Shown: positions 43,736 to 59,900 of the stretch, piece by piece | Layout of the letters: each line of letters begins with the position of its first letter | How positions within the stretch are numbered: the stretch's first letter is position 1 | Source of the DNA: Dimorphilus gyrociliatus | Taxonomy: Eukaryota > Animalia > Annelida | NCBI GenBank assembly: GCA_904063045.1 | Contig: CAJFCJ010000057.1 | Location: forward strand, 1-64,000 | Direction: 5' to 3' | DNA length: 64,000 nucleotides | Position numbers and translations under genes: made by a program | Notes under the pieces: model-generated | Told to the model about the DNA's origin: nothing | What the model saw: only the letters and a program-made list of their open reading frames with translations | Databases searched by the model: none

Positions 43736-44375
43736 TTACATTCTTTTACAAAGGTAGTAACACAGAAAAAAACAACAAACACCACAAGCAATACAAAATA
43801 TTATTGGGATTATGATGATTACAGCTAATGCAGCTGGTAAATATTTAAAAAACAGATTATTTTCATAAGGATCTGCTTCATTTATTAATCCAGCTATAAA
43901 TTCAATTCCACTACCAGTAATTTCGTCATCATTAGCTACCAAAGCCAGAAGAACTGGGTTATTTGTTAATTTAAGTATTGAAGTTTCATTTCCGCATAAA
44001 GGTCTATGAATCTCTTCAGTTCTATTGTCATTCAACCAGTACACACCTACGAAATCTTTGTCGCAGTTTTTTGATTTTTGAATATCCATTTTAATGTAAA
44101 TCCTAATATGCTTTTCGGGTTCTCCAATAAGTTTCCAACAAGTTGTTGTCTTTGGAGAATATCCGCCATTTTTATAGTTATCACTATAGTATTCAGTTGA
44201 AAGTGTAGTAGTTAGTTCAAGATCTTTAGTTTTGTTGCAAATTAGCTGACAGTTCATCAGTGGAAGTAGTACGACAAATTCTAAGATAAAAGAATGTAAT
44301 CTTATAAGATATTCTAAAAAAGTTAGTTTTAATGAAATTATTTAACTTACCAAAGTAGATAGTTAGTCTTGCCAT
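43736..44375 (-). CDS. Signal peptide - CUB domain - TM - Cys-rich tail protein (2 coding exons)
   Basis: MARLTIYF|EFVVLLPLMNC across a 44350-44281 intron. CUB motifs YSPKTTTCWKL, CDKDFVGVY, LCG, F..DDEITGSG. TM AALAVIIIIPIIFCIACGVCC. Confidence 0.85.
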
Positions 44376-44676: not shown

Positions 44677-45544
44677 AAAAAAGACGAGGAGAGAGAATCA
44701 TTGCCTAATCTTTATATCATTAATTGTTTTACTATCTGTAAATGTTTGTTGACATTTAAGTTAAAGTATGTGGTTAAATTAACCACAAAACTATTAAAAC
44801 ACTCATTCAAGAATCGTGAAAATAGCTATTTGAAATAATAAGTACTAATCTCTGATTTATTTCCATTTCTTTCTGCGAGATTTTTGAAAGAAACTAAAAT
44901 AAATGAAATCCAAAGTTTATCAAATACTACTATACCAGCATAGTAAATATTTTAGAAGTTGAGAAAAAATTGATTTTGGGATTTTTTTGGGTCAGGAAAC
45001 TTTTAATTTGAATATTTTTCAGATAATATACGGCTGAACTGAGGTTTAGGACGCATAAAGTGGAAAGGATCTTGTTAACTGTTAGGTTAGGGTTGGGGTA
45101 GAACACTAAAAACTTCTCTCTTTCGTAATTTTTGTTAATTTATATATTTGAACTCTAAGATGATAAACAATAGAAAATGCATATTTTTGTCAGTAAAATA
45201 AAGGCATAGAGACTGATAACTTATCTCTGCTTTATCTTTAAATGTTTACTTTTTTTATCATTTTTTTGTCAATTCTCTATCTATTTTCTATTATTATTTT
45301 TGTAAAATTTCTTTAATGTCATGGTATAAAGTTCACGAAACTCAGAAAAGATAACCATTTTCAAGGTATAGACATAACTTAATCCTTTTTAAAATTGTTT
45401 TAATACAACTTTTTACCGATAGGGGTTTTTTCGTTGCTCATGATTGTTTACATAGTTGTCAATGGAAACAGGATGTTGTACTTTGCACATGTGCAGAACA
45501 AACCTTCCGGTAGCAGAAAATATAATTTATAGAATATTGTAATA

Positions 45545-48500
45545 ATGTCTGATAAACAAAGAGAAGATATTCAACTTGCTTTAGCTAATATAATAAAATC
45601 TCCCGTTCTAAATGATCAACTATTAAGGAATTTGCCATATCAATATGTTAAAGATATATTAATTTCGGTAAATATTTTTTTGAATATTCAACCAAATATT
45701 GTATTTTTTTTTTCCAATTTAGGTTTTGAAGGCAACTGACCTGAAAGATATTCTAACAGATGATGATTTAAAGTTTAAAATTGATGTATGACTGTAGTTT
45801 AGGGCCAACAGAAAACGTCGCCAAGCGAGATAATTGAAAACTAATTTTGGATTGAAGAATGATTAGGAGGACCAAAGTAGCTTTTGATTTGTAGTTAGGG
45901 AGGAGGGGATTTTCATCTAAAAATTAGGATGAAACAATGCATTTGGAGACGTTTTCTGTCGCATCCTCATAGTTGTTATTCCTAAAAAAAATAAATGATT
46001 CTAATAATGTTAATTATGACTATTTAGACTTTCGATCAGAAAATTCAACTTTTAGAAAAGATAATTAAAGCAGTTGGTAAGTTTTTTTATTTATGCTTCT
46101 TCTTTTCATGAAAAGGAAACATTTTCTCTTTAAAGGCAAAGAATTACACGAATCAAATTTTGTTGATGCAAATGATATCGTTTCTGGGAAAAATGTCAAT
46201 AAAACTCTGCAGTTTTTACTTATGTTAACTAGACTTAACAGGATTACAGAAGATGGTAAAATGTTTTATTATTTAAATTGTTATATATTGTAGGAATAGT
46301 TGATTTTTCTACTTTTGAAGAGTGGATGCAATAGTCAATTATCCCTATGTCTATCTATCCTCAAAACTTATATTTTTCTTGTTTCTTTCAAATAGAAAAG
46401 AGTGAACTAAAATTAGGTTCTGAACAACCTATAGAAGTTGAAATTGGCTCTAACATAGAAAATAAACATATAGTACAAAGAAACAATATGCCATTAAAAT
46501 TATTGTTCAGTAAAAGTTTAGAGGTTAAAAAAACAATTTTGAATAATTTTTGAATAAAGAAAAACAATTATATTTCATTTATTGTAACTTATAGAATCCC
46601 GTATATAAAGTCACTGAAAACAAGAAAACTTTTCAAATTAATTCAATAACATTGGAAGATGTAGACTTCTTAAATGATTACTTTTTTTGTTTAATCTTTC
46701 AAATTAAAGGAATAATTAAAGAATTTGATGAAGTAACTATAATTTTTTAAAGAATGGCAGTATTTTAAATGAAATCAATTATATTTTGTCTTTCACAGTT
46801 ACCATGGATACCCCATTCATCTAAAATTACAAATTGCAAAAATATTACTGATTGGGCAGTATTTTGGACAAGCAAATCAGAAAAACAAACATTTTTGAAC
46901 AAATCAAAAACATTGAGAGCGGTAGACTTAAAAGAAAAAAAATACAAATATATTCATTTTTCTTCATTTTGTTTTTAGGTTAATACTTTTGCTGGATGTA
47001 ATTCTTTGAGCACTTGGAATAATGAAAACTCTGCAAAAAGTAGGTTTAAGACACTTAAGAATTCGACTCGGATAGAGTAGTCATATATTTATAATCTCAC
47101 TTTGTCTCTTTCTCCAGCTCAAATTGCTTCTGACGGATCATATTGGAATGATAAAAAGGCTGTTATAATTCATTTTCACAGCTTATATAAAGATAAAGAA
47201 CAAAAAGGATCTTATGATAGAATATTCCAGAGAATTAATTTTGAATCTTTAATGATAAATCAAAAAATTGAATATTGTACAAATGTTTTAAATTATTGGA
47301 AAGTAAAAAATTGGACATTTTATGATTGTTACGAAGTAAGATACAAGTTTCGTTTATCTTTTCTTCTCTCTCTCTCTGTTATATCAATTTTTATTCACAA
47401 ATTTAGGATTATGTTCACCTTTTATCTCCGAAACAATCACTTTTTATCATTCCATTCAATTTAACATGCAATGAAGAAAATCTTTCAAAATATTTCATGG
47501 ATGTAATTATTGGACTTTTGCAAATGGTAAAAACTCGTTTCTTCCTTTACTATGACTATTAAATCCAAATATTTATCTGTTATAGAATTTGTGTCCAAAC
47601 ACTCTACCAGTTGTCATTTTTATTGGATTTGGAACTAAGATAAACGAAATAGCAGCTAAATATGCTCTAATTACAATGATTGAATCATTAATAGAGGATT
47701 TTCACGATGCTATAAGAAAAAGATCAAGGTAATTCAATAGATTTAAAAAGGATTATTAAAGCGATAATATAGATTGTTCTAAAAATAGTATTGAAGAACT
47801 CTCCAAAATTAAATTCAATGATCAAAATAACATTCACAACTTAGTGGCTTTAACTGAATTGTTAAAAGAATTGAAAGAAAATCTGGAGGATAATAATTCT
47901 CATATCATTTCTTTCCTTAATTATGACAATCAAAAGGATCTTAAAGTAAAACTATTTAAATTCCTTTTTTTTTTAAAGATAGAGTTGTATTGTGATCTTT
48001 AGGACTTGGTGGAAAATATGAAAATATCATTTCAAAATGTTACTCATAGGAAACAAAAGTTTAAAGTAGTTTTTTTTCTATTCAATTATCTTTTCCTACT
48101 TCAAAGATAGTGAAATTTGATTTTTGTTTTCTATAGTATTCTGATGATATCATTGATAAATCTATTGCTAAAATTGAGAAAATACTTGACGAAAAGGAAG
48201 ACTTTTTAACGGTAACTCAACTTATGAAGGAAATTAATATTGAAGGTAAGTTTTTTTTATATAGTTATTAAAATCTCTCATCTTCTCTTCACAGATCTAC
48301 TTGCCCTGGACATAGATGATAAAAAAGAAAAATGCTATGCTGAAAAGATATGTCAATTTCCATTTTTCGATGTTTTCCAACTATGTTATACTTTAGTTTG
48401 TAGTTTTATTTTTTATATTATTTATCAACGTTTGCTCCATTTTTAAAATCCAGGGACATATAGTACTTTTGAGAAGTTTTGCTTGTGAAGAATGGTTTGT

Positions 48501-50777
48501 TGCCAATCCAAAATGGTTTACAAACTTGATACAAAAATTGCATAACATCTCTGAAGAGTGTAATGATCGTGTAGAAGATGATTTATTCTTTTTTCGCAAG
48601 AAAACAAAAGTGTGTCAGATAGCTGAATGGTATTGTTCAACTTTTAAATTTCAATCAGTAAGTTATAAAGCTTAGAGGTGTAAAAAAAATAAAAAAGCCT
48701 CTATTAAAAAATGTATTCATTTAGGACATTTTTGAAGTATTTTTTGGGGCAGAATTGTCATTGACCTTATCATCTACAACATTATTTTTTCCCATTCAAT
48801 TATCAACTTGTGAAAAAGATATGATGAAATTAATGAAGGTAATTCTTTTTAAAAGTAAAAAGAAGTGATGATCTTTTTTTCTGTAAAAAGGATGATAAAT
48901 ACACTGCTAAAGTTTCGTTAATCTATAATTTGAAAACAACACTTAATGAATGGGTTCATTGGCGAATTATCTATTATTTTCATTTCATTTTCCAGAAAGA
49001 AAATATGGATACGACTATCAGTGATCTTTATCACAATTGGATAACACTTCAATATGGACCTGTAGAAGCTTTTATTTGCTTTGATGATGCTGAATGTAAA
49101 ACCATTAAAGTTTGCTGTAGGGTTTTTGAAAATGATAATTCTCCTATTCTACTTGCAAACATTGCAAAAGAAATTGAAACTATTATTGATTATTCATTGA
49201 AAATCTCATCTGTTTATTTCTCAGTAAGCAAGATCTATTATTATAGGCACAATATTAAATCTCTTGGTTCTTTTCTTCTTTTTTGTCTTTTATTAGAAAA
49301 CTATGAAAACTCCGTGGGGAGATGAACTTGATAAAATGAAAAAAGATGACGACGACAGATACTCGACTTTAAATTTAAAATTTTGTAAGAAAACATATTC
49401 CTCTTTAAATTAACCCAATCAATTTTTTCTTGTTATTTTTTTTACAGTTAATAATTTTTATTTAAGCTTTGATCATGAGATACAAAGACATTTTTCGGTT
49501 TCATGCTCAAATAAATGTATTCTAAGAAGAGAACATTTTCTATGGAAAATGCATAAAGAGATATATCCAACTTTCAAACGTGAAATGATAGTTAAAGATG
49601 ACAAAAATGAATTTACTACAATTAAAGAAAGAGATCTTTCAGATAATTCTGCTTTTGACTTTATCATGGATTTAATAAACTTCTATTCAATTACATTAAT
49701 CAATTGTCAAAATTTAAAATTTGAATTAATGTAAGTAAAAAAAATCTTTAGTTTTTCATAGTTTTTCAAATGTTAGTAATCATAAGCTTTTCTTTTGGTA
49801 AAAATAGTGATAGTTTTCGAGGATATTCAATTATGTTCAATTCACAAGAAAACACAGTTAAAAGGATAAGAAAAGATAAGGAGGATAAACTGGTAGACTT
49901 TTCTCTAAATGAATATTCCATTGTAACTGTGAAACTATTACCACAACATGGAGAATATAAGTCTTATAATATGGCTTTTTCAGTGAGTTCTGATATATTT
50001 CTTTTTTATATTTTTTGAAATATTTTTTGTTTTTTTTTGTTTCAGAGAAAAGAAATTTGTTTAAATATTTATTTAAATGATATTTCAATACTAATGTTGC
50101 CACTGGAATCTCAATCAAAAGTTATTTTTAAATTTCATGAAGCAGATAGCAATTTGATATTTGACTTTACATATGCTCCAGTAAATATTTGTAATTATTC
50201 TCTTTATCTATTTCGTTATCTCTTTTTCTCTCCTAACCTATCAGAGACAAGAATTCAATTTTTCACATGACTCTATTGATATTGGTCAGAAGTTATTTCA
50301 TAGTTTTTCTGGAGATATTGCAACTGTTGGTATGTTAAAAATTTAATTTTGGCTAGTGAAGTTGTTTTCTAATTGAAGAATTTGTATCCCTATGCCAGAG
50401 GCCATTTTACCAACAGAAAAGTTAATTTTGGTTTCTCGAATCAATAAATCATTATCACAAGATGTTAAATCAATCGAATACATCAAATTGTCATTGAAGA
50501 ATGTTGAAGAAGTGAAACGCTTTTTTGCACAATACTCTAATGATGATGATAATGATCAACATAAGATATCAGGTAGGGTTCTCTTATCAAGTCTAATAGT
50601 TTACTCTACTAATAGTTGTATTTTTCTTAGAAGAGTTTCTTGGTTATTTAAATGCTTACAATTGCCAATCAGTTCCTAATCACTGGATAAAAAGTTTAAT
50701 GAGTGCAAATAATGAAGATGACATACCTTTACCTGATAGAAAAGGCGTTTGTCTATTTTCCAATCTAAAATTATCCA
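45545..50777 (+). CDS. Multi-exon coding region: IFT54/TRAF3IP1-type CH domain followed by a degenerate Roc-COR-like region
   Basis: Spliced N-terminus IQLALANIIKSPVLNDQLLRNLPYQYVKDIL...KIQLLEKII...IVSGKNVNKTLQFL matches the IFT54 N-terminal CH pattern. Later QL|GHIVLL...WFVANPKWFTNLIQKL and VEAFICF...IKVCCR are COR-like. Many 45-70 bp introns; the start may lie upstream (about 45462). Confidence 0.7.
45801..45966. mobile_element. MITE family A, older intronic copy
   Basis: TIRs AGGGCCAACAGAAAACGTC / GACGTTTTCTGTCGCATCC. TSD decayed (only TAGTT shared). Confidence 0.7.
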
Positions 50778-50838
50778 GTAAAATATTTATTTTACTTTTT
50801 TCCTTTCGTATTTATCTGTATGTGTGTGTGTTTTTAAG

Positions 50839-53800
50839 CCTTTGTTAGGAAAAGCTACGGAATAACACTTTTCGAATCATCGTATCGTGGTTGGCAAAAT
50901 GGGATTTTTTTCCCTCAAGAGTTGAGAAATGAGTCATTCATTTATTTAAATGAACTCATTCACTTTGATAAAATGACAGCCTATTTAATCTGTACACCTG
51001 CATCTACTACACATGATGGTCATAACAACACTCATATAATGAAAAAATCAGCTAAAACTATTTCAAGAGTTACTTTTATGAAGGATCTTGAATTTTATAT
51101 GATTTTAAAGTTGTCATTATGGTTATATTTCAATAGAAGTGATATAGTTAGTATAAAACATTAAATAAAACAAACTATTTATTGTTCATTCTACACCTAA
51201 AAGCTTGTAGACAATATTGAATCAAGTCAGCTTCAATTCTATTTTTCATTTTTGATAAATAAATATCCAGATATTGATATACTGACAACTGACCTCCAAA
51301 GTGGAAATATACAAGTTCCATTAAGTGTTCAAACAGTATGAATATTTAATGTCCTTTTTGTTTCTTTTTAATTTACTCTATTAATAAAATATTTTTCACC
51401 AGCTTCTTAAAGAATGTGTACAAACTAAATTGGGTACAGTTTCTAATCCAGATTCTGGGCGCTTTTTGTGCTATTTTCACAACAAGAACTTGAAAACTAC
51501 TAACAAAGAAAGGGATAAGTTTCTAGATTTAATATCAGAAGACAAGATACAAACTGTGGAAAATGATATTCTAAAATTTGATTATTGCCAACAGTAAATT
51601 AATTGTTTTTTAAATCCAGATAATAAAAGATTGTTTTTCAGTTTCAAACTTTTAACAAAATGGTATATTACTAATGACGAATATAATATAGACGGAAGAG
51701 AAGGAGGAGAAGATGAACTATTTGGAAGAGTAAAAAAACTAAACAGATTAAAGTCTATAGCCCTCAAAAATTGCAATATTTCTACATTTGCGACAAATAT
51801 TGACAGGCTATCATCCAGTCTCGAAAATTTGCATATAATGAACAGTCCAATTACGACAATCTCTCCTTCAATTGGAAAATGTTCCTTAGTAACAAATTTA
51901 CATTTAAACGATCTTTTATTGACTGATTTACCAATGGAAATGTCTAATTTATTCCATTTAAAGTTTTTAAACCTGGGTGGAAATTTATTTAAAAGCGTTC
52001 CAAGAGTGATTAATCAACTGAATTGTTTGAAATTTTTGCTTTTACCTGCTATTAATTTCAAACCATTTCATTTAAATATCAATCAATCTTCCATAGTAAC
52101 AATTGATGAATGGAAAAATGTATATACTACACAATATTCCCGACTGAGCCATATCGGATTTGATGAAACAAATATGCTAAAGATTTTTAAAGATGCTGCT
52201 ACTGCAACCAGTAGTGATACTTTAACAACTACAGATCAAATTGAAGATCTTCACGCAACACTTTATAAGACACTACCAAGAATCTCATCATGGAGTGTTT
52301 TAAATAATATTAGTAAACAATCTTACAAGACTCTTACCTTTTTGGATTTAAAATATCAGAGTTTTAAGATTTTGGATGACAGTATTGGGTATTTGGAAAA
52401 ATTAGAAAGTTTACATTTATCTTTCAATTTACTTCTTGAAGAGATAAGCCCTAAAATTGCTGATCTTCCTTTAAATCAAATACTTTTTTATAATTGTCCA
52501 TCATTGAGAACACCTCCTAAGGTAATGGCTAGGTCAAGTGCAAAATACATTAAAAACTATATGAGAGCCCTAAGTAAGGGATTTGTGTCATGTAAAAGAA
52601 CAAAGTTGATGCTAGTTGGCCTTGGCGGCGCTGGAAAAACAAGCCTAGTAAATGCACTAACAGAAAGTAATCAAGAGAAAAGCGAAAAAATAGTGAAAAA
52701 TACTCAAATTACAGATGGAATTTGCATTAAAAAATGGTTTATTAACTCTATTGAATATTCAATATGGGATTTTGCAGGACAAACAGTCTATTACAACACT
52801 CATCAGTTTTTTTTGTCAAATAGAGCTGTTTATTTTTTAGTTTGGAATGTGAGATCTGGAGAAGAGCACGCTGGTCTAGAATTCTGGTTAAATTCTATAA
52901 AATGTCATGCTCCTAAAGCTCCAATTTTCATTGTAGGAACTCATATTGACCAGGTGCTCTTAATACAATTACAATAGGCCTATTAATTAAATATGGTTAA
53001 TATCCAATCTTAGGTTGAAAAAAGTGAACTACCAGTAAAGAAATATCAAAAGAGATATGCACAAATAAAAGGATTTTACTATGTTTCTTCTCTTACTAAA
53101 TTGGTTGCAAATTTATTTTTTTTACTTTTTCATTTTATAGTTTGACATTTATAAACAAAAAACAAACTTTTAAACTGTACAAACAGGGTTTCAAAGAATT
53201 AGTTGATGCTTTATTAGAAATAACTTCAAAAGAAAAATATATGAACGAAAAAATACCAAGTCTTTGGTTAGACTTCGAAGAAGCTCTGTTTAAGTAAGTA
53301 AATATAAAAAATAATTAATATACACTTTAACCTTTGACCCTAAAACAGAGAAAGTAAAACTTTAAATATAATTTCAATTGATAAAGCTATGGATAAAGCT
53401 TTCCACTGTGGTATAGTTGAAAAAGCTGAGGTTGATATTAAATGTTTTTGCTTTACTTATCTCGTTCATTCATGTTCCTTGTACAGTTTTACCAAGCTGT
53501 TGAATTTCTTCATCAGTTGGGATCTGTTCTGTACTTTCAAAATGAATATTTAAGGAAAAAAATTATTATAAATCCTCAATGGATTGTTGATGTAATGGCT
53601 TGCATTGTTTCAGTTCATATAAATCCAATTAAAGTTTGTAACTTTTTAAAATTTTTCATATGTAGAAAGGATTTTTTGTTATTTTTTAATAATGTAGAAT
53701 GGAAAGTTGTTACATGATGACTTGAGTAAAATTTGGCCAGAAGAAACGTACTCTAAAGATCTTCATCAATGGCTTTTACGTTTAACTGAAGAGTTTGATT

Positions 53801-56728
53801 TGACATTTTGCTTAAAAAATGAAATGGCTAGTTTAGTTCCCTGTCTTCTTCCTGATGTTGAACCAGACGTAATAATTTAATAAAATATTAATTAATAATT
53901 GATATATTTTCATTCTGTCATAAAAAATATTACTCAGGATTTTTGGGAAGAAGAACCTTTAAAGGAAAATGAAGTGCAATCTAAGATGATGCTCAATTTT
54001 GATTATCTGCCATTTGGTCTTTTTAACAGAGCTCAAGTTAGACTTTATCAGTTTGGCGATGAATCTCTAATCTGGAAATCTGGCTCTTTTTTGAGAAAAA
54101 ATGGTCACAGGGGTATTTTGAAGAAAACCAGGTAGGGCTTTTTGTTTAATATTATCATTTCTATCATTTACCAATATATATATATATATATAATTGTTAA
54201 GCTTATCAAGCATTCTTATGGAAGTTAGAGGATTAAAACCTGAAAATGTACTTTTTCTTGTCCATGAAGTATTTGAAACATTAATTGCAGAGTCATTTGA
54301 AGGAGTTCAATTTGATTTTAAAGTACCTTGCCCTGAATGCATTTATCAAAATTTGCCAGATCCTAGTATGGTCAAAGCAGTGAGAATAAGAAGGGCACTA
54401 CAGTTAAAAATTCCTTTTATGCAATGCACTCGCAATTTCCATACTGTGTCAATAACTCAACTTCAAAGTAAATTTGCCTATACAAAGCTTTTTATAGTAA
54501 AATAATGACGTTATCTGTTCACAATTAGATATGTTACCTCCTGAGAGCAGTGAAGAATTAGACATGCATCTACAAAGTGCTGTTACAGAGTTAAAGAAGA
54601 TACAACCAGGCCCATTAACAAATGTAGTAATGTTATATTGTTTATCTGACGATCCTCCCAGTGAATTAGACAATAACAGCTATGTTTCTGCAACAAAAAT
54701 AAAAAACGAATTAGAAAAATCAAACTTTTCAATGTAAGGTTTTTCTTTCTATTTATAAAAGTTTAATTTTTAAATTCTTTTTTAGAAAAATGTATAATGA
54801 TTCTTGTGAAAGTTATTTTGAAGAGGCAATAGCTTCATTAAAATCTACACAAGTGGTACTCACACTAATGACAGATGATTTTGTTAAGAATACTACTTGT
54901 AGAAATTTATTCATTTACGTGAAAAAGAATTTAGTAAAGCAAAATCAATTAATTTTAATTAAGAAGAGTGATAAATGGAAAAAGCATACAGATGTTGGAA
55001 TGTTATGCTCGGATGATGTAAGTAAACAATTTTTTTGGTCCAAAAGAGGTTTAAAGATGGTTGACAATCTTTTTCTTAAAGATCTTTTTTGATATTTTTG
55101 ATTAATGATTTCAGTTAAAAGTTAGTATATCTTATAAAGTGATTTTTTAAAACCTAAAATATCATTCGATTGGGAAGGTCAACTGTCATTTTAACCTATT
55201 TAGAAAATGACTATTATTTCAAAACTTCCTACCTATTTAGTTATACATCAACATGCAAAACATTGAGAACTTCAACTCAAAAATGAATGATTTGAAAAAT
55301 TCATTAAATATCAATTCGAAATCATCTACTGAATGGCAGCCATGTTTTATAAGTTATTGTTGGAGTAATTCTCAAATGGCTATAAATAGAGGGACAAAAT
55401 TAAATGAAAAGGCACTTGGTAAAACAGATCCAAGACTATTGAAAGAAAAGCTTGAAGAAGCTGGAATTAAATGTTGGATGGATATTGAACAAGTAAATAG
55501 AGGTGGTTTATTTCAAGATATTGCTGAAGGTTTAAAAAAAGCTAAAATTGTTGTGGCCTGTGTATCAGATGAATATGTTTCATCTAAAAATTGCCAGATG
55601 GAATTCCGCTTTGCAGCTATTACATTGAGATTACCAATTATTCTTGCTATTGTTGGAACTGGTAAGAATTGGATCAAATCTGAAATTGGAATGATATCTC
55701 TACAATATCCAAGAGTTGACCTTCAAGAGAGAGATACTAATGTTGTAGAAATTGTTGACTTTGTCAAAGAAAGGCTTTCTACAGAAAAATTAGACGAAAC
55801 TATAAAAAGTAACAAGGATACAAATCATGAAGAATTTGCTGAACTTTTAGAATTAGCAGAACGGAAGCTACTAAGACAATTAACTATTTTACAAAACTTA
55901 TCCAGAGGATCAAATTTTCCACATATTCCAATATTAGATTTCTCTCCAAATTCAGATGAAAATTCCATAATGGAATATTATTTTCTCTTCCTTTGTGAAC
56001 ACGATCAGGTAAGGGTCAGTAAATATTAATTTCAAATATATTATTAAGATTATGCTCAGGGTTGGCATCTGCCCGATAATCACCAAGTTATTAAATGGAA
56101 TGTTCCATTTAAAAGCGAAGAAGCTGAAAAGCATTTAAGAGAATGGTCTGCTTATTTGGTTAGAATTTATGCCATTCTCCAGTACAGTCACATTCAACTA
56201 CATGTACTGAGGAGTAAAGAAGGACAAAGTTTTCTTGAGCAGTTGCAAACGACCCTTTCAAAGAAAAGCTTCAGAGATAGCTATGTATCTCTGTTGGAAT
56301 CAATAGCAAATAAAATGGATCATCAATATAACACTAGTCTGCCAACTAGTTTAGCCAAGTGTCAGATATACAATGGAAAAATTCTATGGTTGTGCAACTA
56401 TCACCAAAAACAACCAAGAGTAACAATCCTTCAGTCAGATGAAACAAATTTTACTAAGGATTCTAAGACAAATAAGGAAGAAGTACTACTTGAAAAAATT
56501 AAAGGACAGAATGAGCATGGAATTGTAAAGGAAGAAACTTCTCAATATTTAGAAAATAAAGTTTTAAATAAAGAGGAAAAGAAAGAAGAAAAATTGATTA
56601 AAGATGATACAGACAATTCAAATAAAACGGCAGCAAAAAGTCAAGAAGAAAAGGAAAAAAAGAAAGTTATCAATGACCTAATTAGTAATGGAGGTAGAGC
56701 TAAGAGTATAGCTTGTGTAATCTGTTAA
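50839..56728 (+). CDS. Roco-family protein: LRR - Roc - COR - degenerate TIR - TIR - CaaX
   Basis: LRRs, then G1 GLGGAGKTS, TDGI, G3 WDFAGQ, G4 GTHID and COR (FLHQLGSV...INPQWIVD, EEFDLTF). TIR PCFISYCWSNS...CWMDIEQ...SKNCQMEF. Ends ACVIC*. A phase-consistent GT-AG path was traced for the 5' exons and part of COR. Confidence 0.92.
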
Positions 56729-56934: not shown

Positions 56935-59900
56935 TTAAGATGGCAGGAGACTGTTTAAAAAATTTCCAGCTTTCCATATGATTTCTGGTTGTTTGATGCC
57001 TTCAATATCAAATAACAAATTTTCTCTTGGGAGGTTTAGGCCTATCCTCTCTTTCCCATTACCTTGATCCTAAATTGGAGGAAACAATTCATGTAATTCT
57101 TAAATAAACTGAAAAATACAGACGTAATAAAGAAAGGAATGTGTGCTTATATCTATTAATGATAAATTCAAATCTTGCATAATATCAAGACCTCTAAAAA
57201 TGGTTAAGCTTGTCCTAAACAACTCAAGATTGTTTTCTGGACAGAATTTTTTAGCTTTTATATAATTTTGAAAATAGATAACAAAAATATCAAACATTAA
57301 ACCAAATTCATAACATTTTTTATAAAGTTGAACAACTGAAATTGAAGAAAGTGTGGAATAAAAATTGTAATAACAGGTTAAAAAAGATGGACAAAATGGG
57401 ACATGAACTTTAACCTTTCATGTACATTTTCCATAAATAGAGACATTATCAAATAATACATACTTTTAAATTTATAATTTTTCATTACATCATCTTTAAT
57501 TGCTTTACTGAAAGGAAGAATGAGGTAAATTTTAAATTAAAAAAAAAATTGGAAGAAGAGATTCTCTTCTGACATGGCACTTAATATTTACTTGTATTTT
57601 GTCTTATTTGTTATCCATATGTAATTAATGTTAATTTGAGAATAAACAAAAGGATTTACAACAGAGTTTATTGACAAAGATAAAATGAATGCCCAAATGT
57701 AGGTGCTGTGTGTTAAAATACTCTTTTCAAAACATGCCATAAAACCTAGAAGTAATTTTTTTAAATCCTTAAAAATCATGAAAAAACAAATTTCATTTTT
57801 TAATAAACTAACTGAAATAGGATAATGGCATCCATGTGAAAATATTTGACAAGACAATAATTGTTCCCATCTTGAAAACTCTTCGGAATCTTTTACTCTT
57901 TTCAATTGGTGACAGTATAAAGCTCTGCTTCATAATGAAATAAAGAATTCGACAGTATAAAATTAATATTGTTACGCAATTTATCGAAGTGAAAATCGTA
58001 AAAACGAAAACTGAATATAGCCATCCTTCCGGTTTTTCATTTGTTAAATGCAATGAAAAGCATACTTGATATCTTGAATAGTAGGCCTGAAAAGGGAAGA
58101 GAGATCGATTAAACAGCAAGTTAACTAGCATTCATTTATATAAAAAAAACAATGCATTTTCAAAATACATACATTAAACAGCCAATATGGCAAAAACGAT
58201 ATAAATAAAGATGATAATGTAAAGATAGATATGATTATTAATGATTTTGAAAGTGTTGTATCAACAAATTTTAAGCCATTTTTAACCATAGAAAACTTTT
58301 GGCATGTTATTAATAAAATACTAAATTGTGATAGAATTGATGAGAAACTAGCCAATAGTCCAGCAGTTGTGCATAATCTACCAGTTTGCCAATTCTCTGC
58401 CTCTTCAATGTATCTACTAGAAACCAGTCTATCTTGAACTCCTATTATCAGAAAATAGATACTAAACAGCAACTCCGAGAAGTAGAGTAGTATTTGATAT
58501 CTATGAATGCTTTTCTTTATCTTATTCAGTGATGTTGCCAAGCAAAAACTATTCAAAATGAAACTGATTAATGAAAAACTGTTGGCAAAAACTGAAAAAA
58601 TTGCAACACTTTGAAATATGTTAAAGGTTATAATTTTTTTAACCAAACTTTTGACCTACTTTTCAAAAAATTTGAATTAATCATCTCTCCGCATGAATGC
58701 GTATCCATTATCTTTGGTATGCATTCTTCTATATGGAAATTCTTAATAAAACAACAATACTTGTACTTGTCACTTATTAGTCTTTTTATTGATTTTAAAT
58801 TTTTAAACACTTTTTCAACAGGTTCCCTAAATTTGAATTTTACATTTTTCATATGCATTTCTTGTAAATTCTTCAAATTATCAAAACATTGCTCGCATAT
58901 TTCAAATATATTTGAATTTGAAATATTTAAATACTTCAATTTGATTGAATTTTTAAACAAATCAGAAGAGATTTTTTGAAAATGATAAAATTTTAATGTC
59001 AATCTTAAAAGTGATTTTTTAAAGACATTAATACCAATTTCTGTTAATCTACTCTCAATTAGAACAATATTTTGAATTAAATTTAAAAATTTAAAAGTAT
59101 CCGAATGTATAAAGGAAATAGAATTTTTTGTAAAATTTAAAGCAACAATGTTATAAAAATTTCTGACAAACTTGATATTTTTTAAATTTCCATTAAAAAC
59201 AACTAATTTTATTAATTCAAAATTATTGATATTTGTTAATAAATTAACAGTTGGAAATGCTTGAAAATTTGAAAATTCAATTATTTTCCATGTATTTGTT
59301 AGATTGCTTGAAATATTCATTGCTTTCCAACAAGAGATTTTTATAAATTGATTGCACAAACAATTCATTGGGCAATCAACGTTATCAAGATTTTTATCTT
59401 CATTATCATGAAGTGGACAAGTTTTTTCGTTGTTTGTCAGAAATACATTATGGAATCTACATTTGAATAAATCTTTTGCAATTATAATTTCTATTTTTAA
59501 AAATTCAAAAGATATCTTTATTAAATAAAATTTCAAAAGAAAAGTATTTTTTATAAACTTTTATCACAATTCTCTTCATCTTCGCCAAAAATACATTGCG
59601 CAATACCATCACATACTAATTCTTTTAAAATACAATATCCTAGTTCGCTTAAATGCTGTGGAGTATAGAAATGTATTGAATTCTATTCAAAGACTTATCA
59701 TTTACATTTGTTCTACAAAGGAAGTCTTTGATTGAGTTACATTCTTGTTGGCATAAAGAAATCATATGCCCGTAAAGTGAATTACCTTCTTTCAGATTGA
59801 AGAATGTATAGGAAATAGAACATACTGGTAGAAAGGAAAATGAATTTATAGGCTTAATTCACAATAGAATACTCTATTCATTTACAATTATTTTCCTCAA

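What the first reader, a model, noticed from the sequence alone, without database searches (positions are those of the whole stretch)
45545..56728. Possible single giant double-Roco gene: CH - degenerate Roc-COR - LRR - Roc - COR - TIR - TIR - CaaX
Seen: the Roco reading frame is open 45 codons upstream of its first in-frame ATG (50973), back to an acceptor at 50838. A phase-1 donor at 50778 of the upstream gene fits it through a typical 61-bp intron (…NLKLS|TFVRKSYG…). The upstream part has COR-like motifs but no intact P-loop that I could find. Established: Roco proteins act through Roc-COR dimerisation. Inference: one protein of roughly 3000 aa (rough estimate) pairing a dead and a live Roc-COR unit, with a microtubule-type CH domain at one end and TIRs plus a membrane anchor at the other. 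This could be an undescribed signalling scaffold linking cytoskeleton or cilium to TIR signalling.
Basis: partly seen in the sequence, partly recalled or inferred. Interest (0 to 1): 0.85.

Follow-up and report, generated by a model that had tools for sequence, protein, structure and literature searches.

The report
Double Roco gene: dead plus live GTPase
This is one real, transcribed 40-exon gene of the annelid Dimorphilus gyrociliatus; its roughly 2740-residue protein joins a tubulin-binding-type CH domain, a dead copy and a live copy of the Roc-COR GTPase switch, TIR immune-signalling domains and a lipid-anchor motif, and the unnoticed dead copy also turns up in relatives from molluscs to amphioxus.

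Summary
A spliced RNA contig (run X1) runs from about 45499 through every upstream exon into the Roco gene. One of its exons starts exactly at 50839. Contig length, open reading frame and depth all fit the predicted 50777|50839 junction (61-bp, phase-1 intron).

The window is Dimorphilus gyrociliatus. The public annotation (DgyrCDS14632, 2553 aa) already fuses the two halves, but through a different junction. It omits three exons that RNA or a paralog support. My model has 40 exons and 2740 aa.

Pfam finds nothing at residues 120-1107. Residues about 280-790 are nevertheless a P-loop-less Roc-COR:
- Profile-profile comparison gives P 1.7e-6; reversed and shuffled controls score far lower.
- An AlphaFold model built without any bona fide Roc-COR sequences matches only Roco proteins at the top (LRRK2 Z 15, LRRK1 Z 14.2; the top 20 Swiss-Prot hits are all Roco).

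The same dead module sits at the N-terminus of 2800-3300-aa LRR-Roc-COR-TIR-CaaX relatives in amphioxus, Lingula, molluscs and a nemertean (P 1.8e-11).

Roco-TIR proteins are known. I found the dead module described nowhere, so this is a new variant of a known kind. The mechanism (cis pseudo-dimer, membrane-anchored TIR signalling) is inferred. The scan noted similar paralogs on other DNA of this genome.

The parts
45499..45544 (+). minimum 5' UTR; the RNA contig starts at about 45499
   Evidence: Contig length accounting
45545..56728 (+). coding region: 40 exons, 2740 aa, median intron 63 bp, stop TAA 56726-56728
   Evidence: Exons 1-28 come from the RNA contig. Exons 29-40 come from open frames, Pfam and paralog P0001.
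45572..46233 (+). CH-like domain of the MIP-T3 / IFT54 / TRAF3IP1 type (aa 10-111)
   Evidence: Pfam PF10243 E 9.3e-14, above the curated cut-off. PDB 2eqo E 5e-8 and IFT54 5fmt/8bd7.
47156..48059 (+). pseudo-Roc (aa about 282-500). The P-loop is replaced by HFHSLYKDKEQKGS, G3 DxxG by YDCYE, and G4 by GTKIN.
   Evidence: hhalign; fold matches to the Roc domains of LRRK1/2 and CtRoco; motifs
48143..48784 (+). pseudo-COR-A (aa about 505-660) with the motif LCYTLGHIVLL...NPKWF
   Evidence: (the motif hits the true COR-A of many Roco proteins)
48999..49467 (+). pseudo-COR-B (aa about 680-790)
   Evidence: hhalign reaches template position 431 of 461. VIA alignment extends to LRRK2 residue 1858.
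49495..51651 (+). middle region (aa about 800-1330), no recognisable domain, conserved only among Dimorphilus paralogs
50778..50838 (+). the 61-bp phase-1 intron that joins the two halves
50839..51335 (+). exons 26 and 27, present in the RNA contig but skipped by the public model (which joins 50747 to 51403)
   Evidence: The exon 26 peptide is conserved in paralogs.
51679..52566 (+). leucine-rich repeats
   Evidence: Pfam LRR_14, LRR_8, LRR_4
52597..53204 (+). live Roc GTPase with GLGGAGKTS, DFAGQ and THID. It includes exon 30 (53014-53103), which the public model lacks.
   Evidence: Pfam Roc E 7e-23; exon 30 is conserved in P0001; motifs
53217..53865 (+). COR-A
   Evidence: Pfam PF16095 E 7e-31 in P0151
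53971..54466 (+). COR-B
   Evidence: Pfam PF25497 E 2.7e-22
54600..55017 (+). first TIR-like domain. It is degenerate and has Asn where the catalytic Glu would sit (TTCRNLF).
   Evidence: TIR_2 E 0.095. Its position matches a clear TIR in Lingula and amphioxus relatives.
55310..55762 (+). second TIR domain, with Glu in the motif NCQMEF
   Evidence: TIR_2 E 7e-14. Alignment A2 lists an invariant E2853 and a consensus motif NCxMEFRFA at this place.
55955..56422 (+). conserved Cys/His-rich C-terminal domain (LCEHDQGWH ... WLCNYH), not in Pfam
56714..56725 (+). CaaX motif CVIC
   Evidence: conserved in relatives from five phyla

Best explanation
Positions 45545-56728 are one gene of Dimorphilus gyrociliatus (public id DgyrCDS14632) with 40 exons. 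The encoded protein, about 2740 aa, has this order of parts: CH-like domain (IFT54/TRAF3IP1 type), pseudo-Roc, pseudo-COR-A/B, a 530-aa region without recognisable domains, LRR, live Roc, COR-A/B, a degenerate TIR, a TIR with the catalytic-position Glu, a Cys/His-rich domain, a K/E-rich tail, and CaaX.

This much is shown here: the single transcript, the domain map, the loss of the P-loop in the first Roc, and the conservation of pseudo-Roc-COR ... LRR-Roc-COR-TIR-CaaX in amphioxus, a brachiopod, molluscs and a nemertean.

The mechanism is inferred. The protein would be a prenylated, membrane-tethered switch built like LRR-NTPase-effector immune receptors. The LRRs sense a ligand or partner and the live Roc changes nucleotide state. 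Roco GTPases work through COR-mediated dimers, so the dead Roc-COR could serve as a built-in partner in cis (a pseudo-dimer, like pseudokinase/kinase pairs) or as a regulatory scaffold. The output would be TIR-TIR association and probably NAD+ cleavage by TIR2. In this paralog the CH domain would add tubulin or microtubule tethering.
For: Single transcript.

Public single CDS and the organism.

Domains.

Dead Roc-COR:
- hhalign Prob 89.9, P 1.7e-6, 356 colinear columns. Reversed controls give P 0.2-0.3 and block shuffles P 0.002-0.08.
- AF2 model with pLDDT 60.2 and pTM 0.54, built from an alignment without bona fide Roc-COR rows.
- Foldseek PDB: the top 10 hits are all Roco, LRRK1 E 1.9e-7.
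- VIA: LRRK2 Z 15.0 over 384 residues (1331-1858) and LRRK1 Z 14.2; the best non-Roco GTPases reach Z 9.1 or less.
- Swiss-Prot AFDB: the top 20 hits are all Roco.

Family-wide dead module: long-relative N-termini against true Roc-COR give Prob 97.3, P 1.8e-11; against the Dimorphilus module P 2.7e-6. The P-loop is degenerate in all of them.

CaaX conservation.

Roco dimerisation through COR: PMC6337361.

Animal TIRs with the catalytic Glu make cADPR, and the legend of that paper's figure of tested TIR proteins lists Roc and COR among the domain abbreviations: bioRxiv 10.64898/2026.04.20.719644.
Against: - Pfam's Roc and COR models give no hit in aa 120-1107 even at E 10, and the profile-versus-PDB sequence search is blank.
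- The AF2 model has only middling confidence. TM-scores are 0.30-0.41. The residues holding the putative strand 1, P-loop and helix 1 have pLDDT below 50.
- The first AF2 attempt failed (pLDDT 34).
- The alignment used for folding contained the relatives' dead modules, which are themselves remote Roc-COR homologs, so the fold evidence is not fully independent of the profile evidence.
- RNA evidence comes from one assembled contig of one run. The 50777 donor is deduced, not printed. Donor and acceptor score low on my small splice matrix (4.1 and 2.6 bits).
- The public model uses another junction (50747|51403), so isoforms may exist.
- No experiment bears on the cis pseudo-dimer, NADase activity, prenylation or tubulin binding.
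Confidence: 0.62

Rival explanations
1. These are two separate genes: a CH-domain gene ending near the TAG at 50846 and a Roco gene with its own start. The RNA contig and the gene predictions would then be chimeras or read-through products.
For: The tool warns that a contig across two genes shows no single transcript. The splice sites of the joining intron score low. The first in-frame ATG of the Roco part at 50973 could serve as a start.
Against: The contig is spliced at the junction and keeps one frame open for 2740 codons in AT-rich DNA. Paralogs at other loci (P0001, P0004, P0005) and relatives in four other phyla carry the same N-terminal module on the same polypeptide as the Roco part. 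The exon 26 peptide, which lies downstream of the junction and upstream of the LRR, is conserved in paralogs.
Confidence: 0.05
2. The N-terminal module is not a Roc-COR homolog. It would be an unrelated Ras-like or P-loop-NTPase-like fold followed by winged helices, and would resemble Roc-COR by convergence or through modelling bias.
For: There are no Pfam hits. Identity to true Roc-COR is 13%. TM-scores are below 0.5. Generic GTPases and a SelB winged-helix fragment also match parts of the model at Z 8-9.
Against: The match is colinear over Roc, COR-A and COR-B in both sequence profiles and structure. All top hits in two libraries are Roco proteins on their Roc-COR segment. The relatives' module reaches P 1.8e-11. 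A plain HMM of that module hits true COR domains of unrelated Roco proteins, for example an amoebozoan one at E 3e-6.
Confidence: 0.08
3. The architecture is as described, but the dead Roc-COR does not pair with the live one. It would act as an inert spacer or as a docking platform for other proteins. The TIRs would act as adaptors only, without enzyme activity.
For: Nothing here tests contacts or catalysis. TIR1 lacks the Glu. The 530-aa linker between the two Roc-COR units is long and poorly conserved.
Against: The module is kept across phyla that diverged very long ago, which argues for a function. The TIR2 Glu is invariant in the ten relatives aligned.
Confidence: 0.25

Closest known systems
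MFHAS1 / group-1 Roco proteins (LRR-Roc-COR; PMC6337361)
   Same: LRR, then Roc with intact G motifs, then COR-A and COR-B. Amphioxus relatives are labelled MFHAS1 by their annotators. In the fold search, the N-terminal pseudo-Roc-COR model matches MFHAS1 at E 1e-6.
   Different: This protein is 2.6 times longer. It has a second, P-loop-less Roc-COR upstream, a CH domain, two TIRs, a Cys/His-rich domain and CaaX. None of these is reported for vertebrate MFHAS1.
Molluscan ROC-COR-TIR proteins, described as 'TLRs/MyD88-like with ROCO domains' in Aplysia (PMC9334734)
   Same: The LRR + ROC + COR + TIR combination in a spiralian, with accessory MBT or EF-hand domains. I also see MBT in the amphioxus relative and an EF-hand-like motif in the family consensus.
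   Different: That paper lists domains found by InterPro only. It makes no mention of an N-terminal degenerate Roc-COR, CaaX or a CH domain. Orthology to this gene was not tested.
LRRK2 / LRRK1
   Same: They are the best structural matches of the dead module (Z 15 and 14.2). They are also large multidomain Roco proteins.
   Different: This protein has no kinase and no WD40 domain. Its effector is TIR. LRRKs have a single Roc-COR.
Tandem intact Roc-COR proteins: a bacterial Pyrinomonadaceae protein (P0133) and amphioxus P0060
   Same: Two Roc-COR units in one chain.
   Different: Both units there score strongly against the Roc-COR profile (for example 458.8 and 348.5 bits in P0133). Here the first unit has lost the P-loop and is invisible to Pfam.
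IFT54 / TRAF3IP1
   Same: The N-terminal CH-like domain (Pfam MIP-T3; PDB 2eqo, 5fmu, 5fmt, 8bd7).
   Different: Outside the CH-like domain, Pfam finds only Roco and TIR domains here, so the rest of the protein is unrelated to IFT54. This is domain sharing, not orthology.

Membership tests
Roco family (live unit, aa 1646-2116) | Roc GTPase domain with intact G1, G3 and G4 motifs | tested here: met
   Pfam Roc E 7e-23. GLGGAGKTS, DFAGQ and THID are present.
Roco family (live unit, aa 1646-2116) | COR-A and COR-B directly after Roc | tested here: met
   PF16095 E 7e-31 and PF25497 E 2.7e-22 in P0151
Roco family (live unit, aa 1646-2116) | GTP binding and hydrolysis | not testable with these tools
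   This needs purified protein.
Roc-COR (N-terminal unit, aa about 280-790) | Passes the curated Pfam Roc / COR-A / COR-B models | tested here: not met
   No hit even at E 10
Roc-COR (N-terminal unit, aa about 280-790) | Colinear profile-profile similarity over Roc, COR-A and COR-B | tested here: met
   hhalign P 1.7e-6 against controls. A transitive link through the relatives' module gives P 1.8e-11 and 2.7e-6.
Roc-COR (N-terminal unit, aa about 280-790) | Roc-COR fold | tested here: met
   Predicted model (pLDDT 60). Top matches are exclusively Roco, Z 15.0 to 11.4 against 9.1 or less for others. The model is of moderate confidence, and TM-scores are below 0.5.
Roc-COR (N-terminal unit, aa about 280-790) | P-loop GxxxxGK[ST] | tested here: not met
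   HFHSLYKDKEQKGS stands in its place. The amphioxus relative has VGDHTPASAQ. I therefore call the unit a pseudo-GTPase, not a working Roc.
TIR domain proteins | TIR domain above the Pfam threshold | tested here: met
   TIR2: TIR_2 E 7e-14, 52.7 bits against a cut-off of 28
TIR domain proteins | Second (upstream) TIR | tested here: inconclusive
   TIR_2 E 0.095, 13.6 bits. Its position matches a clear TIR in relatives.
TIR NADases | Catalytic glutamate, and NAD+ cleavage | tested here: inconclusive
   Glu is present in NCQMEF of TIR2, and alignment A2 lists an invariant E2853 in the consensus motif NCxMEFRFA. My assignment of this Glu to the catalytic position rests on motif resemblance recalled from known TIRs, not on a structural alignment. 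Activity is untested.
CaaX-prenylated proteins | C-terminal Cys-aliphatic-aliphatic-X | tested here: met
   CVIC at the C-terminus. CLLL, CTVM, CSLM, CSVM, CSIQ, CVIL, CVLL and CNIS occur in relatives. Actual prenylation cannot be tested here.
IFT54/TRAF3IP1 orthologs | CH-like domain plus the C-terminal coiled coil that binds IFT20 | tested here: not met
   Only the CH-like domain is shared. The remainder is Roco and TIR.

The most novel reading that the evidence does not exclude
The dead Roc-COR is an ancient, bilaterian-wide built-in partner that pairs in cis with the live Roc-COR. These giant prenylated TIR-Rocos would then work as intramolecular pseudo-dimers, which would be a natural experiment on the dimer-dependent GTPase cycle debated for LRRK2. 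The pseudo-dimer would gate TIR NADase signalling at membranes, and in this Dimorphilus paralog at microtubules through the CH domain.
Probability: 0.25. Interest if true: 0.78.

Novelty: new variant of a known kind. Interest (0 to 1): 0.6.

Why it matters
Roco GTPases (LRRK2, LRRK1, DAPK1, MFHAS1) are thought to cycle through COR-mediated dimers, and how dimerisation controls the GTPase is still debated (PMC6337361).

A conserved family that carries a nucleotide-dead Roc-COR and a live one in the same chain would offer a natural heterodimer-like system. It would parallel pseudokinase/kinase pairs.

The same proteins couple an LRR sensor and a GTPase switch to TIR domains that keep the catalytic-position glutamate, and to a lipid anchor. 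That places them among candidate animal counterparts of LRR-NTPase-TIR immune receptors.

Practically, the work corrects the public gene model: three exons are missing or skipped there. It also shows that about 500 residues which domain databases leave blank are a recognisable module.

Tried and rejected
- Pfam on single exons and on aa 120-1107 of four paralogs found no Roc or COR.
- A profile of the N-terminus against PDB sequences gave only noise.
- Direct BLASTP of the upstream half against the downstream half gave only a weak COR-A hit, E 0.064.
- The first AF2 run on aa 1-1107 with 5 sequences gave pLDDT 34 and was unusable, so I did not search with it.
- My first splice dynamic programme over-split or skipped exons. 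I corrected it by hand using the sequence, the RNA depth and paralog P0001.
- Word-based homolog searches with P0001, P0011 and alignment A2 returned only Dimorphilus or amphioxus proteins. I could therefore not deepen the alignment or survey other annelids.
- The middle region, aa 780-1335, shows no similarity to the relatives' middle region (P 0.24).
- No second copy of the gene lies in the window.
- A second RNA run could not be found. Only X1 holds the locus among the runs served.


Full report
**What is in the sequence**

The + strand between 45.5 and 56.7 kb is a chain of short open frames separated by stretches of about 60 bp. Frame 0 is open from 50838 to 51161. GT lies at 50778-50779 and AG at 50837-50838. 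The upstream frame reaches 50777 with one base of a codon left over.

**Transcript evidence**

Two searches for sequencing runs found one RNA-type run (X1) and DNA runs (X2-X5). I laid X1 and X2 on 45520-51519.

X2 holds the stretch unspliced in one piece. X1 holds a single 5161-nt contig that matches without mismatches and skips GT..AG intervals. Thirteen joints were printed, and pieces of the contig were listed with their contig coordinates. One piece begins exactly at 50839 and runs to 51146, and 1458 further contig bases lie downstream of it.

From the contig coordinates I solved the unlisted exons. I required GT-AG introns, an open frame and the exact exonic length. For 49448-51146 only two chains satisfy this, and both end the upstream exon at 50777.

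The final model accounts for the contig length exactly: 3703 exonic bases from 45499 to 51146. It reproduces 20 of 30 depth bins to rounding, and two more bins once a 2-nt alignment ambiguity is allowed. The other eight bins carry extra depth that I attribute to repeat contigs.

The donor at 50777 is thus deduced rather than read from a printed joint. This is the main limit of the RNA evidence, together with the fact that it rests on one assembled contig from one run.

**Identity of the locus**

A search with the LRR-Roc exon (437 aa) against 1.84 billion representatives gave a 2321-aa protein at 66% identity as best hit (P0001) (collected). It is DgyrCDS14676 of Dimorphilus gyrociliatus.

A word search with its N-terminus returned P0151, which is DgyrCDS14632 (2553 aa). 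P0151 is 99.9% identical to my model over aa 1-1107 and 96% over the remainder, where the differences are model gaps.

So the window is D. gyrociliatus, and the public annotation already treats the locus as one coding sequence. The annotation differs from my model in three places:
- It joins ...DRKG to LLKECV... (50747 to 51403). That skips the end of exon 25 and all of exons 26 and 27, which the RNA contig contains.
- It lacks exon 30 (53014-53103), which completes the Roc domain and is conserved in P0001.
- It was right, and my first model wrong, at two downstream junctions. I corrected both.

The exon 26 peptide is conserved in paralogs P0004, P0005 and P0019.

**Final gene model**

The model has 40 exons, 8220 coding bases, 2740 aa and a median intron of 63 bp. 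The genome-wide median is 66 bp (PMC7854359).

Exons: 45545-45667, 45723-45785, 46028-46076, 46136-46255, 46396-46523, 46595-46732, 46799-46921, 46979-47039, 47118-47335, 47407-47526, 47586-47728, 47789-47945, 48003-48065, 48137-48245, 48295-48395, 48454-48657, 48725-48838, 48996-49223, 49297-49384, 49448-49730, 49808-49982, 50046-50180, 50245-50329, 50399-50572, 50631-50777, 50839-51146, 51204-51335, 51403-51593, 51642-52953, 53014-53103, 53187-53293, 53349-53430, 53487-53633, 53698-53868, 53938-54131, 54202-54467, 54529-54733, 54786-55017, 55241-56008, 56060-56725.

**Recognised domains**

| Domain | Evidence |
|---|---|
| CH-like, MIP-T3 type, aa 10-111 | Pfam E 9.3e-14; PDB TRAF3IP1 E 5e-8; IFT54 |
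| LRR | Pfam LRR_14, LRR_8, LRR_4 |
| Roc | Pfam E 7e-23; motifs GLGGAGKTS, DFAGQ, THID |
| COR-A | Pfam E 7e-31 |
| COR-B | Pfam E 2.7e-22 |
| TIR2 | Pfam TIR_2 E 7e-14 |
| TIR1 | weak here, E 0.095; clear at the same place in relatives |
| C-terminal CVIC | read from the sequence |

TIR2 carries Glu in the motif NCQMEF. Alignment A2 lists an invariant E2853 in the consensus motif NCxMEFRFA of ten relatives. TIR1 has Asn at the corresponding place.

**The upstream 'degenerate Roc-COR'**

Pfam sees nothing in aa 120-1107 of this protein or its paralogs, even at E 10. Three further lines of evidence say that the module is nevertheless a Roc-COR.

*Profile comparison.* I aligned aa 260-800 with four Dimorphilus paralogs and compared this with a 108-sequence alignment of bona fide Roc-COR units. 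hhalign gave Prob 89.9, P 1.7e-6 and score 55 over 356 colinear columns, running from switch II of Roc to COR-B. Reversed alignments scored 17-18 (P 0.2-0.3). Twenty block shuffles scored 21-32. The HMM of the module hits the COR-A core of many unrelated Roco proteins at the same profile positions.

*Relatives in other phyla.* Relatives of 2800-3300 aa were found in:
- amphioxus (labelled MFHAS1 by its annotators)
- Lingula
- Haliotis, Pecten, Ylistrum, Sinanodonta and Bulinus
- the nemertean Tubulanus

They share a conserved N-terminal module. That module matches true Roc-COR at Prob 97.3, P 1.8e-11, and the Dimorphilus module at P 2.7e-6. Reversed controls give P 0.4-0.6. A plain HMM of it hits true COR domains, including an amoebozoan one at E 3e-6. 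The P-loop is degenerate in all of them.

*Structure.* The first AF2 job failed (pLDDT 34). The second used aa 270-800 with 17 other N-terminal modules and no bona fide Roc-COR rows. It gave pLDDT 60.2 and pTM 0.54.
- Foldseek against the PDB put ten Roco entries on top: LRRK1 at 1.9e-7, CtRoco at 3.3e-6, LRRK2 at 3.7e-6 and MbRoco2 RocCOR-deltaC at 8.1e-6. Each aligned over about 500 columns.
- VIA-align gave Z 15.0 to LRRK2 residues 1331-1858, Z 14.2 to LRRK1 and Z 13.0 (rmsd 4.7 Å over 265 residues) to MbRoco2. The best non-Roco GTPases reached Z 9.1 and covered only the Roc part.
- Against Swiss-Prot AlphaFold models, all top 20 hits are Roco proteins on their Roc-COR segments.

TM-scores are only 0.30-0.41, and the part holding the putative strand 1 and P-loop is poorly modelled. 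I therefore take the fold evidence as supportive but of moderate strength.

*Motifs.* The P-loop place holds HFHSLYKDKEQKGS, G3 reads YDCYE, and G4 reads GTKIN. The unit is best called a pseudo-Roc.

**The family**

All the long relatives end in a CaaX box preceded by a basic, Ser-rich stretch. They also share the Cys/His-rich domain after TIR2.

Between the dead module and the LRRs they carry different inserted domains:

| Protein | Inserted or N-terminal domain |
|---|---|
| Amphioxus relative | MBT |
| Haliotis relative | PLAT |
| Tubulanus relative | SPRY |
| Dimorphilus P0004 | F5/8 type C |
| Dimorphilus P0151 and P0001 | CH-like, at the N-terminus |

The CH domain is therefore a local acquisition, while the dead Roc-COR is the conserved feature.

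Proteins with two intact Roc-COR units also exist, in a Pyrinomonadaceae bacterium and in amphioxus P0060.

**Literature**

- ROC-COR-TIR proteins of Aplysia have been listed as unusual 'TLRs/MyD88s with ROCO domains', some with MBT or EF-hand domains (PMC9334734).
- Algal TPR-ROCO-TIR is mentioned in PMC11378527.
- A 2026 preprint reports Glu-dependent cADPR production by animal TIR domains. The legend of its figure of tested TIR proteins lists Roc and COR among the domain abbreviations.
- The Roco review PMC6337361 describes three architecture groups and COR-mediated dimerisation, but no dead second unit.
- The D. gyrociliatus genome paper does not mention Roco, LRRK or TIR.

Within the library I could search, nobody has described the N-terminal pseudo-Roc-COR.

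**Mechanism**

Shown here:
- one transcript
- the domain order
- an intact live GTPase
- a P-loop-less first unit
- a conserved Glu in TIR2
- a conserved CaaX box

Inferred from the named families:
- prenyl anchoring to membranes
- LRR-mediated sensing
- a GTP-dependent conformational switch
- TIR association, with NAD+ cleavage as output
- the dead Roc-COR as a partner in cis for the live one
- tubulin binding by the CH domain

I give the anatomy about 0.85 and the cis pseudo-dimer about 0.25.

**Verdict**

The fusion is already in GenBank and Roco-TIR proteins are known, so this is not a new kind of system. The new element is the conserved dead Roc-COR, which Pfam does not detect and which none of the papers I could search describes.

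Noticed in passing
window 50748-51402, 53014-53103: The public model DgyrCDS14632 skips the last 30 nt of exon 25 and all of exons 26 and 27, using a 655-nt intron that is unusual for this genome. It also omits exon 30, which completes the Roc G domain. RNA depth supports including exons 26-27, and paralog P0001 supports including exon 30.
   Followed up: yes
window 55955-56422: A Cys/His-rich domain follows TIR2 (LCEHDQGWH ... WLCNYH). It has no Pfam model. Cys, Glu, Trp and His positions are invariant in relatives from amphioxus to molluscs. It may bind zinc.
   Followed up: partly
window 45720-46119, 46520-46719, 48120-48319, 49920-50119, 50813-50833: Short intronic segments show very high contig depth in both the RNA and DNA runs (up to 550x and 1980x). 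One joint, 50833 to 50011 with 9 inserted letters, is seen in both runs. These are dispersed repeats, plus a TA/TG microsatellite just upstream of the 50839 acceptor.
   Followed up: no
relatives P0011, P0010, P0030, P0004 (not in the window): The family swaps one accessory domain between the dead Roc-COR and the LRRs: MBT, PLAT, SPRY or F5/8 type C. The family consensus also contains an EF-hand-like motif inside the LRR region and FBXL-type LRRs at the N-terminus.
   Followed up: partly
window 43736-44257 (- strand) and 57100-58131 (- strand): Neighbouring genes on the opposite strand: an ORF ending in a hydrophobic, Cys-rich tail upstream, and GPCR-like transmembrane ORFs downstream. The Roco gene fills the interval between them, which leaves no room for further exons.
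   Followed up: no
X1 loose end at window 45941: Another RNA contig that matches from 45941 onward is preceded by TTAGGG-type telomere-like repeats. The intron 2 repeat therefore also lies next to such repeats elsewhere.
   Followed up: no
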